Origin: Iphione sp. A-MEVVRFRX5
Taxonomy: Eukaryota
Assembly (NCBI GenBank): GCA_976226885.1
Contig: OZ320316.1
Location: 107,818,001 to 107,882,000, forward strand
Direction: 5' to 3'
Length of the DNA stretch: 64,000 bases
Shown here piece after piece: positions 12,317-18,661 of this stretch. The position numbers were made by a program, and so were the translations under genes. The notes beneath the pieces were generated by a model. That model saw nothing but the letters and a program-made list of their open reading frames with translations. It was not told the origin of the DNA and made no database searches. The first letter of the stretch is position 1. Each line of letters opens with the position of its first letter.

Positions 12317-12550
12317 TTTTTTATTCATTTATTTCCCCTGACAATCCATTGGTGTCAGGACTTAACTACAGTAAGGCGTTTCTTTTTTCATAATGACTAT
12401 GTACAGTCTATATACAATCAATATACATTATATACAACTATTTACAGATATATACATAAAGATGATGAATTGATAGAGCGTTTTACAAACAGTGGTAGTA
12501 TGATGATGTGGTGTTTTCAAGTGCTACTTTTATTAAGACCATACATATTC

Positions 12551-14683
12551 TCAGTGTACTCTTAGGTTCTCCCTTCTGAATTTCTCTAGAAGGGATTTCT
12601 TCAGTTCTTTTTTGAATTGTTGTTTTGGAAGTTCTTTCAGGGATGTGTTGAGTTTGTTCCAAATTATGCTTGCTTGGTAGATAGGGCTAGATTTAAGAAT
12701 GTCTAGTCTGGGCTTTAGTGTTTTGATTGGGGGGTTTCTCAGTATACTTCTTTCAGCGACCTTCTGATATTCGGTGTGAAGGTGTTTGTGGTGTAGTATT
12801 AGGGTGTAGTAACTACTTCTGAATCTAAAGGGTAATATATTATGCTTGGCCATTAGGGAGTTTGCATTTTCATGAGTTTCTCTACAGACAATTCCCACGG
12901 CTTTTCTTAATTGACTCTCCAGTTTTCGGAATAAGGAGGAATTGAAACACTTTATTGAGCCGATACCGTACTCTAAGTTTGGTATGAAGTAAGATTTCAG
13001 AGTGATCATGGCAGTATGCCTGTCGCATAGCTTCGATACATGCTTCATTAGGCTCAATAGACTGTACGACTTCTTTAGTTTGTGTTGTAGTTCGAGAGTC
13101 ATGTCAAGGCTATTGTCAAGTATGAAGCCAAGGTATTTGTAATGGTAAACTTGGGTCAATATATTATTTCCAATTCTGATATTGAGGGTCGATTTTCTAA
13201 ATTTACTACGTTTGCTTGTGAATAAGAGAGTTTCAGTTTTGTTGTAGTTAATTTTGACTCCATTTACATGACACCACTTATCTAGCTTATTAATTTCCTT
13301 GTTGAGTTTTTTTTCAATATCACTTGGTGACTTGGCGCCATAAAGGATGACAGTGTCATCAGCATACATAATTGTGCAGCAGTCAGAAATTTCATTAATG
13401 CAGTCATCTATGAACAGGGCAAACAACATTGGGCCAATTATACTACCTTGTGGTACCCCAAGTCTCAAAGCCATTGTGTTCGATACAGTATTCCCGATTT
13501 TAGTAGTAATATTTCTATTCTTAAGGTAATTATCAAACCACGCTATCGCAGGACCCATGCCCATTGCTTTGAGTTTAGCCAAGAGTACAGGGTGTTGGAG
13601 GGAATCGAATGCCTTCCTGTAATCTATGAAGATGGCCCCTAATATATTTCCCTGATCTAGGTGGTTGCATACATAGCTTAGGACTTTGTCTATTGCTTGA
13701 GTGGTTGATCGTTCTTTTCTAAACCCATACTGATTGTCCGAAAGTAGTTTGTTCTCTTCTATGAAGTGCATCGTTTGGTCAAATATAATTTGCTCTAATA
13801 ATTTACTTGGTAGAGGAAGGATGCTTATTGGCCTGTATGAATTTGGATCAGACTTACTTCCCTTCCCTTTGTATAGAGGTGTTATACAGGCTCTTTTCCA
13901 GTCACTAGGGATTATATTCCTTTCAATGCATTGGTTCAATAGATATGTGAACTCTCTCGATGTAGCAAGTAGACATTCGATTAATATCTTAGCATTACAA
14001 TAATTCAATCCACTGGGCTTAGAGGTGTTAACTCCTTTTAGTAGTTTAACGACTGAAGATTCTGATACCGTATGCAGTGAGAGGGTGGTATTCGTACGCC
14101 TTACACCGGATGTAATCAAGGGATGATCTAAATCAAAGTCTGAATGGCCTACCGTAGCAAAATGCTCGTTTAGTTTCTTTGCTGTTTCTTTGACCGAAAG
14201 TTGATGTGAGAGGGAGATTTCCATGTTCTTTTTCCCTGTTCCTAAAATACCTTTCAGTACTTGCCAGTATCTCTTAGGATTTGATTTGTTTCTCTCAATT
14301 TGGTCCCTCACATAGAGAGACTTGTCACTAGCTAATTTTTTACAAGCCGCAAGTCTGAGGGCGGATGCCCTCTGGTACATGGAGGTGTTTTTCAGTCTGA
14401 TTGCTATGCGAAATAGTGAATTTTTCTCTTGAATTAATGCACGAGTTTCATTCTTTATCCAGTAAGTATTGTCCGAGTAGTTATTTCTTTTGCGTTTCAA
14501 GGGTGATATCTGACTTACATAAGATTCAAAGGTTTTGCTCATATATTCCCACAGATAATCTGGGTCTCTTTGATGATAAACACGAGACCAGTCATGATTT
14601 TCTAGTATCATTTTCAAGTTAAAGGCATGTGCATCACCCCAGGGGCAATAGCTCAGACAGGGTTGTTTTTCTCTTCTGTCCAT
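12551..14683 (-). CDS. LINE B reverse transcriptase (710 aa)
   Basis: Contains SYRPISILP, NQYGFR, IDYRKAFD, GVPQGSIIGP, IMYADD and YKYLG. Confidence 0.95.
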   Translation of the reverse strand: MDRREKQPCLSYCPWGDAHAFNLKMILENHDWSRVYHQRDPDYLWEYMSKTFESYVSQISPLKRKRNNYSDNTYWIKNETRALIQEKNSLFRIAIRLKNTSMYQRASALRLAACKKLASDKSLYVRDQIERNKSNPKRYWQVLKGILGTGKKNMEISLSHQLSVKETAKKLNEHFATVGHSDFDLDHPLITSGVRRTNTTLSLHTVSESSVVKLLKGVNTSKPSGLNYCNAKILIECLLATSREFTYLLNQCIERNIIPSDWKRACITPLYKGKGSKSDPNSYRPISILPLPSKLLEQIIFDQTMHFIEENKLLSDNQYGFRKERSTTQAIDKVLSYVCNHLDQGNILGAIFIDYRKAFDSLQHPVLLAKLKAMGMGPAIAWFDNYLKNRNITTKIGNTVSNTMALRLGVPQGSIIGPMLFALFIDDCINEISDCCTIMYADDTVILYGAKSPSDIEKKLNKEINKLDKWCHVNGVKINYNKTETLLFTSKRSKFRKSTLNIRIGNNILTQVYHYKYLGFILDNSLDMTLELQHKLKKSYSLLSLMKHVSKLCDRHTAMITLKSYFIPNLEYGIGSIKCFNSSLFRKLESQLRKAVGIVCRETHENANSLMAKHNILPFRFRSSYYTLILHHKHLHTEYQKVAERSILRNPPIKTLKPRLDILKSSPIYQASIIWNKLNTSLKELPKQQFKKELKKSLLEKFRRENLRVH

Positions 14684-16396: not shown

Positions 16397-18210
16397 TGTT
16401 GAGAACTAGACTCCGTTGTTTGTGCAGTGTCGGATTGTGTTGTATTTGTGTGTATAGCAGTGGATGTGTTGCTTCTCTCAGATGCGGTGGTCTCTGTGGC
16501 GAGGCCTGACGCTGTCTGTGTTAGCGTTTGGTTGTTATGCTGTGTGTGTGTTGTGCTCCCTGCCAGTTTCCTTCTAGGTTTTCGAATGGGGCGGGATGGT
16601 GCTGTAGTACCACCTGGCGCTGTTCGAATATCATTTCTGACCCTGTCTAGGATTTCTCCTGTCCAATTGGTTCCTACAAATTTGTTTTGACCAATCAGAT
16701 TGGACCTAAGAGTTGCTGCTGCCCCCCATTCATGGTCAAGGGACGCTTCTACCAGTTTGTAGTTACCCGTGTCGGTTAGTTTTTTGCACAGGCTCGGATT
16801 CTGTTCGAACTTGGCTCTAGTTACGTCATACATGATAGTTTTCCTTCTGTCATTGCTCAGGACAGCAGCGCTACATAAGGTTTTAGCTCTACGAGCAATT
16901 TGGGTTGGGTCACTAATCCCCAGTATGTCGTTCTTCATTGACGTGTCACCCATTTCCTCAGCCATAATCGCCATACGGGCTTGTTCAACCGAGTTGTAGC
17001 ATACATTGTTATGTGTGAAGTTACATTTGAAAGTGTTTGACAGCGGATGGTTCTTTCCGTAGAAAGCCCAAGCTGTCTCAGTAACGCGTTCCGACGCTTT
17101 CTCAAGGCTAATCCCTGGTGGCAGGCGGTGGAGGGTTTTTGAAGTGTATACACTGCCATTTATGACAATCTTGTTGCCGTCTAACTTGGTTTCGTACTGA
17201 AGGCTTTTTGCTAAGTGGTGAATACCCCGTAGCTCCGCCCTTGTTAGTTTTTCAGCTGGTGTTAGATCTTCGTTTACCCAGATGCCCCTCAGAGTCTTTA
17301 GATTAGCGCACCCATGGAGGATCTTTCTTCTTGAATTTGGATGAATCAGCCTGACCCTACTATCTCGCACCTTTTTTTCACTTTTTTGCCCAAGTCTGTA
17401 ACAAGAATCAATCTCATTGTTTGTGAAACTGCTATTGGTTCTTTTGAAGATTTTGGTTAGACAGGTAATTAGACGTTCATGGGTTTCACCCCCCTCTTCA
17501 GCTAGGCCGGCAACAATCAGATTGTTAGCCCGGGCATCCCTTTTAAGAGTTTCAATTTGTTCTCCCAGAGTGTTAATTCTGTTTAATACACTTTGCGGGA
17601 CAGCAGCATCTTTTTTTGCTGTTTGTTCTAGCACCTCTACCCGGGCCTTGAGAGCAGCATTTTCTGATTTGAGGGTGATTATTCTATCCTTCTGGTTTAT
17701 TAGCCCGGTGATTACCTCGTCCAATTTAGCATTACTTGTTTGTATACCATTATTGAAGGTCTCCTGGGCCTTCTTTGTTTCAGAGATATGCTCATTCAAA
17801 ATGCCGCTGAATTAATTGAACATTTTATGCATGTCACTTTTCATGTCTGCAAACATGTCTTGAACTAGCATTGGGTTAGTCGTGTCAGGGGGTTTTTGGC
17901 TTAGGAGTTGGAGTGACTTTAGCACATCTTGGTCTGGGGTAAGGTTCAGAGAGGATTCGGAGTATGTTATTGAGTCATCTCTAGTTTTTTTGTGTTCTAA
18001 GTCTGTATCAATTGGACTCACCTCTTTTCTCTTGATCCCCGAATCTTGTGTGGTGAACACATTATGCGTCGGTGTTGCATGTTCAGTGGGTGTGCTTGCA
18101 AGAGCAGTAACCTTAGGTGGTGATAGGACCGCCTTAACGTAGGTCTCCGCAGTGTCCAACAGTATGTTGCTGATAGCCATTGTCTCCATTGTCTCCTTTA
18201 GACGAGACAA
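16393..18210 (-). CDS. LINE B ORF1 (about 605 codons, one in-frame TAA at 17812-17814): coiled coil, RRM-like, NADAR domain
   Basis: Track ORFs 17812..18210 and 16393..17799 are in the same frame. RANNLIVAGLAE…DSCYRLG…VRLI…IWVNEDLT is Transposase_22/RRM-like. AFYGKNHPLSN…SVEQA…RAKFEQNPSLCKKLTDTGNYKLVEASLDHEWG…GTNWTGEILDRVR is a canonical NADAR pattern. Confidence 0.85.
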
Positions 18211-18661
18211 TATCCAGAAACATCGGTCCGTAAAATGTCGATATCCGCTTATTTGTTGTGAAGGATGATATTAACCTTGTTGCTCTAATGATTTTTCTTG
18301 TTTTGTTGGTTGCTGTACTTATAGTCTAGCATATATTGAAGGTTAATGTTGGTCGACTCCCCCGGCCGCGGTTAGCACGTCCGTTCACGTTCGCGCCATA
18401 AAAATGCTTATAGTCATAAAGGTAAATAAAGAGAGAAAGTGGAGTGGAGAAATGTAGAGTGTGGAAGGCGAGGTAGAGATAGGAGAGACATGAAGAAAAC
18501 GTGTAGATGTTGATAGTGGAGAGAGAAATAGCAAGAGGAACACAGTGAGGTCAGAGCCAGAGTGATTCAAGATGGACGACCTCTTGATGGCTCAACGAGG
18601 CTCCCTTAGCCAGCGTTCAACCGGTGTTCATACCCAGCTGATGCTGTCATGAGACCTCCTT

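What the first reader, a model, noticed from the sequence alone, without database searches (positions are those of the whole stretch)
12317..18652. Three-ORF LINEs whose ORF1 carries a NADAR (ADP-ribosyl/N-glycosidase) domain, with a separate esterase ORF
Seen in the sequence: LINEs A (8430-20688), B (12317-18652) and C (31300-36700) are highly divergent from each other. All have the same layout: ORF1 = coiled coil + RRM-like + C-terminal NADAR-like domain, then a free-standing SGNH ORF, then APE-RT. B has the most canonical NADAR (about 16630-17075: F…LSN, SVEQ, KFEQN..L…L..T…LVEASLDHEWG, G.N..G.IL..VR). Established: NADAR/YbiA proteins are N-glycosidases, and some reverse DarT1 guanine ADP-ribosylation of DNA. 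Esterase domains are known in CR1/L2/RTEX ORF1 proteins, but as part of ORF1. I do not know of a described NADAR-ORF1 + separate SGNH architecture. Inference: this is a stable clade of LINEs whose RNP carries an enzyme that could strip host ADP-ribose marks from the element's RNA/cDNA or from the TPRT site, i.e. an anti-defence module.
Basis: partly seen in the sequence, partly recalled or inferred. Interest (0 to 1): 0.92.

Follow-up and report, generated by a model that had tools for sequence, protein, structure and literature searches.

The report
LINE retrotransposons carrying a NADAR enzyme
Three decayed copies of an abundant invertebrate LINE group whose RNA-binding ORF1 protein is fused to a NADAR enzyme that strips ADP-ribose from DNA/RNA bases, usually with a separate esterase gene; this hints, untested, that these jumping genes counter a host ADP-ribosylation defence.

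Summary
All three ORF1 proteins match Pfam NADAR above the curated cut-off. The fold model of B's ORF1 (pLDDT 96.6) is an L1-ORF1p-like RRM+CTD followed by a YbiA/NADAR fold. B's middle ORF folds as an SGNH hydrolase. B sits inside A with a 9-bp target duplication.

Corrections: all three copies are dead. B has a stop in ORF1 and an APE/RT frameshift. A has lost NADAR catalytic residues. A and C have lost the esterase serine, and B lacks the phosphate-binding lysine.

At family level the fusion is large and constrained. There are 610 protein clusters at E<=1e-30, and both catalytic glutamates are kept in at least 96% of 122 full-length relatives. The three-ORF layout recurs in nine divergent lineages from at least four datasets; two-ORF relatives also exist.

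Novelty is reduced. A 2025 paper (PMC12477816) already remarks that oyster LINE ORF1 proteins in Repbase carry YbiA-type NADAR domains, and first-stage readers of this scan noted the module many times elsewhere in this genome. I found no description of the separate esterase ORF together with a NADAR ORF1.

The anti-ADP-ribosylation counter-defence role is plausible but untested. Clams make guanine-ADP-ribosylating CARP-1, and NADARs reverse that chemistry on DNA and RNA.

The parts
12317..18652 (-). LINE B, whole element, nested in the ORF2 of LINE A
   Evidence: Target-site duplication GACCTCCTT at 12308-12316 and 18653-18661. A's frame resumes exactly after the second copy.
12317..12335 (-). 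B 3' end: AATAAA signal and short A tail
   Evidence: The minus strand reads ...AAATGAATAAAAAAAA next to the target duplication.
16393..18210 (-). B ORF1: N-terminal region, heptad/coiled-coil stretch, RRM+CTD, NADAR and a Ser/Thr-rich tail. It is broken by an in-frame TAA at 17812-17814.
   Evidence: The 132-aa and 468-aa ORFs are in the same frame, separated by one stop.
17062..17532 (-). B ORF1 RRM + C-terminal domain (L1 ORF1p type II-like)
   Evidence: AF2 model pLDDT 96.6. Foldseek to the human L1 ORF1p trimer 2YKO/2YKP/2YKQ gives E 3.5e-6 and TM by target 0.52-0.55.
16624..17061 (-). B NADAR domain (YbiA type). It keeps E (SVEQ, 16981-16992) and E/D/W (LVEAS-LDHEWG, 16723-16755). The K50 and W89 equivalents are lost.
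   Evidence: Pfam PF08719 at 73.4 bits. Foldseek: 8BAU E 2e-8 with TMt 0.68; 2B3W TMt 0.72. Residue mapping.
15713..16396 (-). B free-standing SGNH hydrolase ORF (227 aa). Its ATG overlaps the ORF1 stop (ATGA).
   Evidence: Blocks TDSHG, GTND and DGCH. Lipase_GDSL_2 scores 20.8 bits, below the cut-off. AF2 pLDDT 80.4; 112 PDB SGNH matches at E<=1e-3. Overlap shown.
14683..15372 (-). B APE endonuclease part of ORF2: no ATG, SDQ in place of SDH, frame ends at 14683
   Evidence: Pfam Exo_endo_phos_2 at 37.9 bits; translation.
12551..14683 (-). B reverse transcriptase part of ORF2, in another frame than the APE
   Evidence: Pfam RVT_1 at 123.6 bits. It has a C-terminal WN.L motif and no CCHC.
8285..10093 (+). 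A ORF1. The NADAR domain is at 9587-10027 and is catalytically degenerate (E43 kept; K50 to Q, E125 to Y, D130 to N, W133 to L).
   Evidence: Pfam NADAR at 43.2 bits; residue columns.
10194..10895 (+). A SGNH-like ORF: no ATG, nucleophile Ser lost (CDTRT), DGLH kept
   Evidence: Alignment. It is one of the six sequences used to build the SGNH profile, so its profile score is not independent evidence. No Pfam hit.
11558..12316 (+). A APE domain (5' part of ORF2, up to the B insertion)
   Evidence: Pfam Exo_endo_phos at 35.9 bits.
18662..20688 (+). A RT and C-terminal part of ORF2 (after the B insertion; one break near 20017-20026)
   Evidence: Pfam RVT_1 at 76.7 bits; WN.L motif.
34955..36619 (-). 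C ORF1. The NADAR domain is at 35000-35395 and keeps E, K and E.
   Evidence: Pfam NADAR at 76.0 bits; residue columns.
34267..34870 (-). C SGNH-like remnant: 117-aa ORF (Ser to Asp, TDDRG) plus a frameshifted C-terminal piece
   Evidence: Weak profile match for 34267-34569, E 1e-3.
31459..34233 (-). C ORF2: APE (33499-34233) and RT (31459-33411), same frame with one in-frame stop
   Evidence: Pfam hits; frame arithmetic.
31300..31335 (-). C 3' end: (ATTCA)n microsatellite tail

Best explanation
What it is (shown). The region holds three dead, mutually divergent copies of APE-type LINEs. They belong to a large invertebrate group with the gene order ORF1 / small SGNH ORF / ORF2 (APE-RT). ORF1 is an L1-ORF1p-like protein: a heptad region, then RRM and CTD, with a YbiA-family NADAR domain fused to its C-terminus and packed against the RRM-CTD in the model. 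The SGNH protein is translated from its own ORF, which starts at or within about 180 nt of the ORF1 stop.

How it most likely works (inferred). ORF1p coats the LINE RNA and travels with it to the target site. This places an N-glycosidic ADP-ribosyl hydrolase directly on the element's RNA, on the nascent cDNA and on the nicked target DNA. There it would remove ADP-ribose that pierisin/CARP-1-type ADP-ribosyltransferases attach to guanine or cytosine bases. Such adducts would otherwise block reverse transcription or second-strand synthesis. On this reading NADAR is a retrotransposon-borne eraser of nucleic-acid ADP-ribosylation.

The SGNH esterase most likely does what the CR1/L2 ORF1 esterase is thought to do, namely lipid- or membrane-linked RNP assembly or transport. 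Here it is made as a separate polypeptide.

The copies in this window themselves are non-functional.
For: Identity:
- Pfam NADAR is above cut-off in all three ORF1s.
- The AF2 model has pLDDT 96.6 and pTM 0.89. It matches NADAR 8BAU and YbiA 2B3W, and L1 ORF1p RRM-CTD.
- The middle ORF has an SGNH fold.
- APE and RT are present.

Constraint on catalysis:
- A profile search found 18270 hits, 610 of them at E<=1e-30, and most of the top 150 cover the whole RRM-CTD-NADAR profile.
- In 122 full-length relatives at about 25-33% identity, the E43 column is Glu in 119, E125 is Glu in 117, K50 is K/R in 106, and W133 is aromatic in all 122.
- These are the residues shown by mutagenesis and structure to do guanine-ADPr hydrolysis (PMC11543638).

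Active elements exist: P0006 lies on at least 5 contigs with an identical ORF1 and an intact 964-aa ORF2. L010 has three clean ORFs.

Chemistry and context:
- NADARs, including YbiA-type and an animal (sponge) NADAR, reverse pierisin-family (ScARP) G- and C-ADP-ribosylation on DNA and RNA (PMC11125620; PMC11833690; PMC12945103).
- Six clam species have N2-guanine DNA ADP-ribosylating activity, including CARP-1 (PMC11209040).
- NADAR has been acquired independently by other genetic parasites: invertebrate nidoviruses including a Pacific oyster nidovirus, Ectocarpus Gypsy elements, and T4-like phages, where it defeats DarT1 (abstract of PMC11257639).
Against: - There is no direct evidence of any enzymatic activity, substrate or host ADP-ribosyltransferase for these elements.
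- The host species of the window is unknown, and I could not check whether it encodes a CARP-1/pierisin-like enzyme.
- YbiA-type NADARs also cleave small-molecule N-glycosides (riboflavin intermediates), so conserved catalytic residues do not fix the substrate.
- The K50 lysine is not universal in the family: 16 of 122 relatives lack K/R there.
- Related two-ORF LINEs do without the esterase, so the esterase and NADAR need not act together.
- All three copies here carry disabling mutations, so nothing at this locus can be working.
Confidence: 0.45

Rival explanations
1. NADAR has a general RNA- or NAD-metabolite processing role in the element's own life cycle, for example clearing an NAD-derived adduct or a reactive ribosylamine from the template RNA or the nucleotide pool. 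On this reading it does not counter a host defence.
For: - The only paper that mentions the oyster LINE NADARs suggests processing of the RNA intermediate (PMC12477816).
- NADAR is linked to capping or 2'-O-methyltransferase domains in giant viruses and nidoviruses (Atlas row 8).
- E. coli YbiA is a riboflavin-intermediate N-glycosidase (cited).
Against: - NADARs were inactive on 5'/3' phosphate-end RNA ADP-ribosylation in vitro (PMC11833690).
- No such RNA-processing step is known or needed in other LINEs, which thrive without NADAR.
Confidence: 0.25
2. The NADAR domain is kept mainly as a structural or nucleic-acid-binding extension of ORF1p, replacing or extending the CTD. Catalysis would be dispensable.
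For: - Individual copies tolerate loss of catalytic residues: A has lost E125/D130/W133 and B has lost K50/W89.
- The model packs NADAR tightly against RRM-CTD, with pTM 0.89.
Against: - The copies with lost residues are dead elements with stops and frameshifts elsewhere.
- Across 122 divergent relatives the two catalytic glutamates are among the roughly 19 best-conserved columns of the whole 305-residue segment.
Confidence: 0.1
3. NADAR and the SGNH esterase form a two-enzyme pathway on one substrate, for example an acylated ADP-ribose or an esterified ADP-ribosyl adduct. This would explain why they travel together.
For: The three-ORF order recurs in nine deeply diverged lineages from at least four datasets, spread over most deep branches of the ORF1 tree.
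Against: - NADAR-LINEs without the esterase exist: P0002, P0006, L007 and probably L002.
- Esterases occur in CR1/L2/RTEX LINEs that are not reported to have NADAR (PMC4120745, PMC3905857).
- No chemistry links the two enzymes.
Confidence: 0.07
4. The NADAR matches are chance ORFs, or host gene fragments trapped in transposon debris.
For: The region is a nest of degraded repeats, and all three copies are broken.
Against: - Three independent Pfam hits lie above the curated threshold (E 6e-11 to 5e-21) at the same position of three ORF1s that are only 20-27% identical.
- Hundreds of public relatives have the same contiguous RRM-CTD-NADAR reading frame, followed by APE-RT.
Confidence: 0.01

Closest known systems
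Repbase 'Tx1' LINE families of Crassostrea gigas whose ORF1 proteins carry YbiA-family NADAR domains (remark in PMC12477816, Genome Biol 2025)
   Same: A LINE ORF1 protein with a YbiA-type NADAR domain in a lophotrochozoan. The function was stated there to be unclear.
   Different: That paper gives one sentence and a supplementary alignment. It has no fold analysis, no catalytic-residue analysis, no family size and no mention of a separate SGNH ORF. The three elements here lack the C-terminal CCHC motif, and their RTs score no better against L1 ORF2p than against R2. A Tx1 assignment is therefore doubtful for them, but it could not be tested against Repbase.
L1-type (type II) ORF1p: coiled coil + RRM + CTD (human L1 ORF1p, PDB 2YKO/2YKP/2YKQ)
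   Same: The RRM+CTD fold (Foldseek E 3.5e-6, TMt 0.52-0.55), a heptad region upstream, and the position as the first ORF of an APE-RT LINE.
   Different: An extra roughly 150-residue enzymatic NADAR domain and a long disordered tail after the CTD. Sequence identity to L1 ORF1p is 16-20%.
YbiA-family NADAR hydrolases (Phytophthora nicotianae NADAR 8BAU; E. coli YbiA 2B3W)
   Same: The fold (TMt 0.68-0.72). The E...K motif and the Glu in the last strand that defines the YbiA family are conserved across the ORF1 family.
   Different: Here the domain is fused to a retrotransposon RNA-binding protein. The substrate is unknown, and the window copies have lost one or more active-site residues.
Type IV LINE ORF1p esterase (CR1, L2/ZfL2-1, RTEX; PMC3905857, PMC4120745)
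   Same: An SGNH hydrolase encoded upstream of ORF2 in a LINE, with a catalytic Ser / Asp-x-x-His.
   Different: Here it is a separate roughly 220-300 aa ORF without a coiled coil, and it coexists with a type II ORF1p instead of replacing it. Block I reads DS(R/H)G. Several lineages have Cys in place of the block III Asn.
NADAR domains of other genetic parasites: T4-like phage anti-DarT1 NADAR (PMC11257639), invertebrate nidoviruses including Pacific oyster nidovirus (PMC12377751, PMC11848433), Ectocarpus Gypsy Pol (PMC12477816)
   Same: A mobile or viral replicon that has captured a NADAR domain. In phage its proven role is counter-defence against DNA guanine ADP-ribosylation.
   Different: A different replicon type and fusion partner. 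No defence system is known for the LINE case.
Free-standing GDSL/SGNH ORF3 of bdelloid rotifer LTR retrotransposons (PMC5408684)
   Same: A separate esterase ORF carried by a retroelement, with catalytic residues intact.
   Different: That is an LTR element with the ORF after pol. Here the ORF lies between ORF1 and ORF2 of a LINE.

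Membership tests
NADAR superfamily (Pfam PF08719) | Profile match above the curated gathering score | tested here: met
   B 73.4, A 43.2 and C 76.0 bits against a cut-off of 35.1.
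NADAR superfamily (Pfam PF08719) | YbiA-like fold (helical core flanked by small sheets) | tested here: met
   B model pLDDT 96.6. Foldseek: 8BAU E 2e-8 with TMt 0.68; 2B3W TMt 0.72. Only B was modelled.
YbiA family of NADARs (as opposed to the DarT1-linked BC4488 family) | Glutamate (not Asp or His) in the last strand (E125 of P. nicotianae NADAR) | tested here: met
   B reads LVEAS and C reads IIEIS. It is Glu in 117 of 122 family relatives. A has Tyr, in a dead copy.
Catalytically competent NADAR | E43, K50 and E125 equivalents all present (residues shown essential in PMC11543638) | tested here: inconclusive
   C has E, K, E. B has E, M/A, E, so the Lys is lost. A has E, Q, Y. The family consensus keeps all three.
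SGNH/GDSL hydrolase | Conserved blocks: Ser nucleophile in block I, Asn in block III, Asp-x-x-His in block V | tested here: met
   B has TDSHG, GTND and DGCH, and the same blocks are found in L001 and L004. L003, L006 and L010 have Cys for Asn. A and C have lost the Ser.
SGNH/GDSL hydrolase | Pfam Lipase_GDSL_2 match above the gathering score | tested here: not met
   B scores 20.8 bits and L001 24.3 bits against a cut-off of 32.9. A and C have no hit.
SGNH/GDSL hydrolase | SGNH alpha/beta/alpha fold | tested here: met
   B model pLDDT 80.4. There are 112 PDB matches at E<=1e-3, including GDSL lipases and PAF acetylhydrolase at TM 0.61-0.65.
APE-type non-LTR retrotransposon (LINE) | APE endonuclease + RT in ORF2, target-site duplication, 3' A-rich or microsatellite tail | tested here: met
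   Pfam APE and RVT_1 in A, B and C. B has a 9-bp duplication and AATAAA + A run. C has an (ATTCA)n tail.
Type II ORF1p (coiled coil + RRM + CTD) | RRM and CTD folds as in L1 ORF1p | tested here: met
   Foldseek hits to 2YKO/2YKP/2YKQ, 2LDY and 2W7A.
Type II ORF1p (coiled coil + RRM + CTD) | N-terminal trimeric coiled coil | tested here: inconclusive
   There are proline/glycine-free 28-residue windows with hydrophobic a/d positions, and weak Pfam hits to coiled-coil families. No dedicated predictor or model was run.
Tx1 clade of LINEs (label given in Repbase to oyster NADAR-LINEs) | RT groups with Tx1/L1; Cys-rich (CCHC) motif after RT; site-specific insertion | tested here: not met
   No CCHC motif is present. 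RT E-values to L1 ORF2p are no better than to R2. The nearest named hit is labelled 'mobile element jockey'. A C-terminal WN.L motif is typical of CR1/L2 (from my own knowledge). A proper RT phylogeny against reference clades was not possible.
DarT1-NADAR toxin-antitoxin antitoxin | Asp at the catalytic last-strand position, a conserved K115, and a neighbouring DarT1 gene | tested here: not met
   These are Glu-type (YbiA family) domains in a eukaryotic LINE context with no ART gene in the element.

The most novel reading that the evidence does not exclude
ORF1p-NADAR is a retrotransposon-borne eraser of base ADP-ribosylation. Its spread through hundreds of LINE lineages in molluscs and annelids, alongside NADAR capture by mollusc and crustacean nidoviruses, would then reveal that these animals use pierisin/CARP-1-type ADP-ribosylation of DNA or RNA as an innate genome-defence system against retroelements and viruses. 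That would be an animal counterpart of bacterial DarT defence and phage anti-DarT NADARs.
Probability: 0.3. Interest if true: 0.85.

Novelty: new variant of a known kind. Interest (0 to 1): 0.6.

Why it matters
LINE ORF1 proteins are classified into a few types. Apart from the CR1/L2/RTEX esterase, they are regarded as RNA chaperones rather than enzymes.

This family adds an enzyme of a very specific, recently solved chemistry: removal of ADP-ribose from guanine and cytosine bases of DNA and RNA. The enzyme sits on the protein that coats the LINE RNA. The catalytic residues are held constant across hundreds of lineages.

The physiological role of animal NADARs is an acknowledged open question (PMC11125620). 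So is the role of the DNA-ADP-ribosylating CARP-1 enzymes of clams.

If the two are opposing sides of a transposon-host conflict, both questions become testable with existing assays. It would also extend the DarT/anti-DarT logic from phage-bacteria conflicts to animal genomes.

Even if the role is different, the three-cistron LINE raises further questions. It has two accessory enzymes and stop/start overlaps or short spacers of up to about 180 nt, which makes it a useful case for LINE translation mechanisms and modular evolution.

Tried and rejected
- The word-indexed protein search with whole B ORF1 and with the B esterase ORF returned nothing. This was a sensitivity limit, not absence: the exhaustive profile search found thousands of relatives.
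- Sequencing-run look-ups for B: none was listed. No expression evidence was obtained, and read laying was not used.
- The organism of the window and of the public relatives could not be identified.
- A profile search of PDB sequences with the esterase alignment gave only E 0.9. The fold search was needed instead.
- dN/dS on the only close DNA pair (the two ORF1 copies in L007) was uninformative, with one difference in 1995 nt.
- I considered a programmed frameshift or reinitiation at the B APE/RT junction (stop/ATG overlap at 14683). I rejected it because L010 and A have a contiguous APE-RT and C has a plain in-frame stop.
- No 2A-like peptide is present in the LINEs. There are no Rfam matches in 8-38 kb.
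- B's nearest well-covered RT relative (L011) has no ORF1 or esterase in the 840 nt of upstream sequence available, so it was uninformative.
- The de Souza & Aravind 2012 and Aravind 2015 papers were not held.

Full report
**Anatomy**

The stretch 8.2-20.7 kb holds a plus-strand LINE (A) interrupted by a minus-strand LINE (B, 12317-18652).
- B is flanked by a duplicated GACCTCCTT (12308-12316 and 18653-18661).
- B ends in AATAAA plus a short A run.
- A's ORF2 frame runs from ...RADIDLL (ending at 12316) straight into NERVQERG (starting at 18662).

A third LINE (C, minus strand, about 31300-36700) ends in an (ATTCA)n tail.

Each element has the same order of reading frames:
- a long ORF1;
- a short ORF of about 230 codons;
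- APE and RT.

**ORF1**

Pfam NADAR (cut-off 35.1 bits) is matched at the C-terminus of all three ORF1s: B 73.4, A 43.2 and C 76.0 bits. The three proteins are only 20-27% identical to each other.

I predicted the structure of B residues 90-394 with an alignment of 125 relatives.
- The model has mean pLDDT 96.6 and pTM 0.89.
- Its C-terminal half matches Phytophthora NADAR with bound ADP-ribose (8BAU, E 2e-8, TM by target 0.68) and E. coli YbiA (2B3W, 0.72).
- Its N-terminal half matches the RRM+CTD of the human L1 ORF1p trimer (2YKO/2YKP/2YKQ, E 3.5e-6, TM by target 0.52-0.55).

ORF1 is therefore a type II ORF1p with a NADAR domain added after the CTD. Upstream lie heptad-like stretches, and downstream a low-complexity tail.

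**Middle ORF**

B's 227-codon ORF starts with an ATG that overlaps the ORF1 stop (CAATGAATG).
- It carries the blocks TDSHG, GTND and DGCH.
- It scores below the Pfam cut-off for Lipase_GDSL_2 (20.8 bits).
- Its model (pLDDT 80.4) matches 112 solved SGNH hydrolases at E<=1e-3, including PAF acetylhydrolase at TM 0.61-0.65.
- Language-model neighbours are free-standing 227-244 aa proteins recorded from molluscs and annelids, plus GDSL clusters.

**State of the copies**

All three copies are dead.
- B has an in-frame TAA in ORF1 (17812-17814). It has no ATG for ORF2, SDQ in place of the APE SDH motif, and APE and RT in different frames.
- C has an in-frame stop between APE and RT, a frameshifted esterase, and Asp in place of the esterase serine.
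- A is split by B, has Thr in place of the esterase serine, and has no ATG for that ORF.

I mapped the NADAR residues shown by structure and mutagenesis to matter: E43, K50, E125, D130 and W133 of the Phytophthora enzyme (PMC11543638).
- B has E, M/A, E, D, W and has also lost W89.
- C has E, K, E, H, Y.
- A has E, Q, Y, N, L.

**Family level**

A profile of the three RRM-CTD-NADAR segments was scored against 1.84 billion representatives.
- It found 18270 proteins at E<=1e-3 and 610 at E<=1e-30.
- Most of the best 150 cover the whole profile and are 270-780 aa long.
- None is more than 34% identical to A, B or C.

In 122 full-length relatives the key columns are strongly conserved:

| Column | Conservation |
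|---|---|
| E43 | Glu in 119 |
| E125 | Glu in 117 |
| K50 | Lys/Arg in 106 |
| D130 | Asp/Asn in 104 |
| W133 | aromatic in 122 |

Both glutamates are among the 19 near-invariant columns of the alignment. This argues for long-term selection on catalysis.

**Genomic context of relatives**

Some relatives have only two ORFs.
- P0002 and P0006 (one ENA assembly) are followed after 367-400 bp by an intact 964-1042 aa APE-RT ORF with no room for an esterase.
- P0006 occurs identically on at least five contigs, so that element looks recently active.
- L007 also lacks the esterase and has a tandem duplicate of ORF1.
- L002 shows no recognisable esterase.

Others repeat the three-ORF order with an SGNH-like middle ORF:
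- L001 (25% identity to B's esterase, E 2e-13);
- L003;
- L004/L005;
- L006;
- L008 (E 1.5e-33 to a profile that did not include it);
- L010 (E 1e-19, with a contiguous APE-RT ORF2).

These come from at least three further datasets and fall in most deep branches of an ORF1 tree (FastTree). The three-ORF layout is thus widespread and probably old, with esterase-free derivatives. With so few labelled tips this remains an inference.

**LINE clade**

- The RTs of A, B and C are 26-30% identical to each other, and B's best public hits reach 31-36%.
- Against solved structures, all three score no better with L1 ORF2p than with R2.
- There is no CCHC motif after RT. All three end with a WN.L motif, which from my own knowledge is typical of CR1/L2-type elements.
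- A named relative is labelled 'mobile element jockey', and another relative has an N-terminal PHD finger.

I therefore place them provisionally in the Jockey/CR1-L2 supergroup. The monophyly of NADAR-LINEs could not be tested without reference libraries.

**Prior knowledge**

Full-text searches for NADAR/YbiA/DUF1768 together with LINE, ORF1 or transposable elements returned a single relevant paper.
- That paper is PMC12477816 (2025). It reports NADAR in Ectocarpus Gypsy Pol.

Other published background:
- Type II ORF1 is known in L1, CR1, L2 and R1.
- Esterase ORF1 (type IV) is known in CR1, L2 and RTEX.
- Free GDSL ORFs are known in bdelloid LTR elements.

I found no description of a type II ORF1-NADAR plus a separate SGNH ORF. 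First-stage readers of this scan noted the same module many times elsewhere in this genome: 229 notes mention NADAR. These notes are unchecked. They are consistent with high copy number.

**Mechanism**

What is established:
- NADARs hydrolyse the N-glycosidic bond between ADP-ribose and guanine N2 (PMC11543638).
- YbiA-type enzymes do this too (PMC11125620).
- They act on RNA as well, but not on phosphate-end ADP-ribosylation (PMC11833690).
- They also remove cytidine ADP-ribosylation, and this includes a sponge enzyme (PMC12945103).
- Clams contain N2-guanine DNA ADP-ribosylating activity, including CARP-1 (PMC11209040).
- T4-like phages use an orphan NADAR to defeat DarT1 (abstract).
- Invertebrate nidoviruses, including one from Pacific oyster, carry NADAR domains.

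What is inferred:
- ORF1p coats LINE RNA and accompanies it to the target site.
- A NADAR domain rigidly packed on its RRM-CTD is well placed to clear ADP-ribose from the template, the cDNA or the target.
- I rate this counter-defence reading at about 0.3 as strictly stated in the novel case. I rate the combined best-explanation statement (identity plus this mechanism) at 0.45.

The main rival is a housekeeping role in RNA or metabolite processing. No step of the mechanism is shown for these elements.

**Verdict**

The architecture is a conserved, abundant LINE variant. The NADAR-ORF1 fusion itself has been remarked on once in print, so the finding is a new variant of a known kind rather than categorically new. 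The functional hypothesis is attractive and directly testable, but it is unsupported by direct evidence.

Noticed in passing
P0001 (public protein XP_048255699.1, Haliotis rufescens LOC124129589): The top-scoring hit of the ORF1 profile is a 4240-aa abalone host protein with 7 tandem NADAR domains. These are 27-33% identical to a LINE ORF1 NADAR. P0025 (5 domains) and P0045 are similar. It is unclear whether these are donors or domesticated descendants of the LINE domain.
   Followed up: partly
L007:5001-9800: One public element carries two tandem copies of the 664-aa ORF1-NADAR gene that differ by one codon. The spacers are identical over 514 bp, and a single ORF2 follows.
   Followed up: partly
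window 27591-30611 and 37076-37504 (+): Fragments of further A-like LINE ORF2s flank element C: RT and C-terminal pieces 36-55% identical to A. C therefore also sits in a nest of older LINEs. No NADAR ORF1 is left for them.
   Followed up: partly
window 14683 (-): In B the stop of the APE frame and the ATG of the RT frame share one base. I read this as an accidental frameshift, because A and L010 have a contiguous APE-RT.
   Followed up: yes
L003:7557-8129, L006:1490-2158, L010:2691-3416: In several lineages the esterase block III Asn (oxyanion hole) is replaced by Cys (GVCD, SICD, GICD), while the Ser and, where the ORF is complete, Asp-x-x-His are kept. This may be a variant active site.
   Followed up: no
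window 6803-6946: A run of 144 N (assembly gap or masked). It was left untouched.
   Followed up: no
same genome, other pieces (scan notes s1-353830): A first-stage note reports a PolB-NADAR fusion elsewhere in this genome. If real, a second class of mobile element in this host also carries NADAR. It is an unchecked note.
   Followed up: no
L001, L002, L004, L005, L008, L010 (Logan contigs of ERR14368249/ERR14368248): One pair of public runs yields many 3-6 kb contigs, each holding a different NADAR-LINE lineage with largely open frames. That organism has a very diverse and possibly expressed set of these elements. The library type and species could not be looked up.
   Followed up: no
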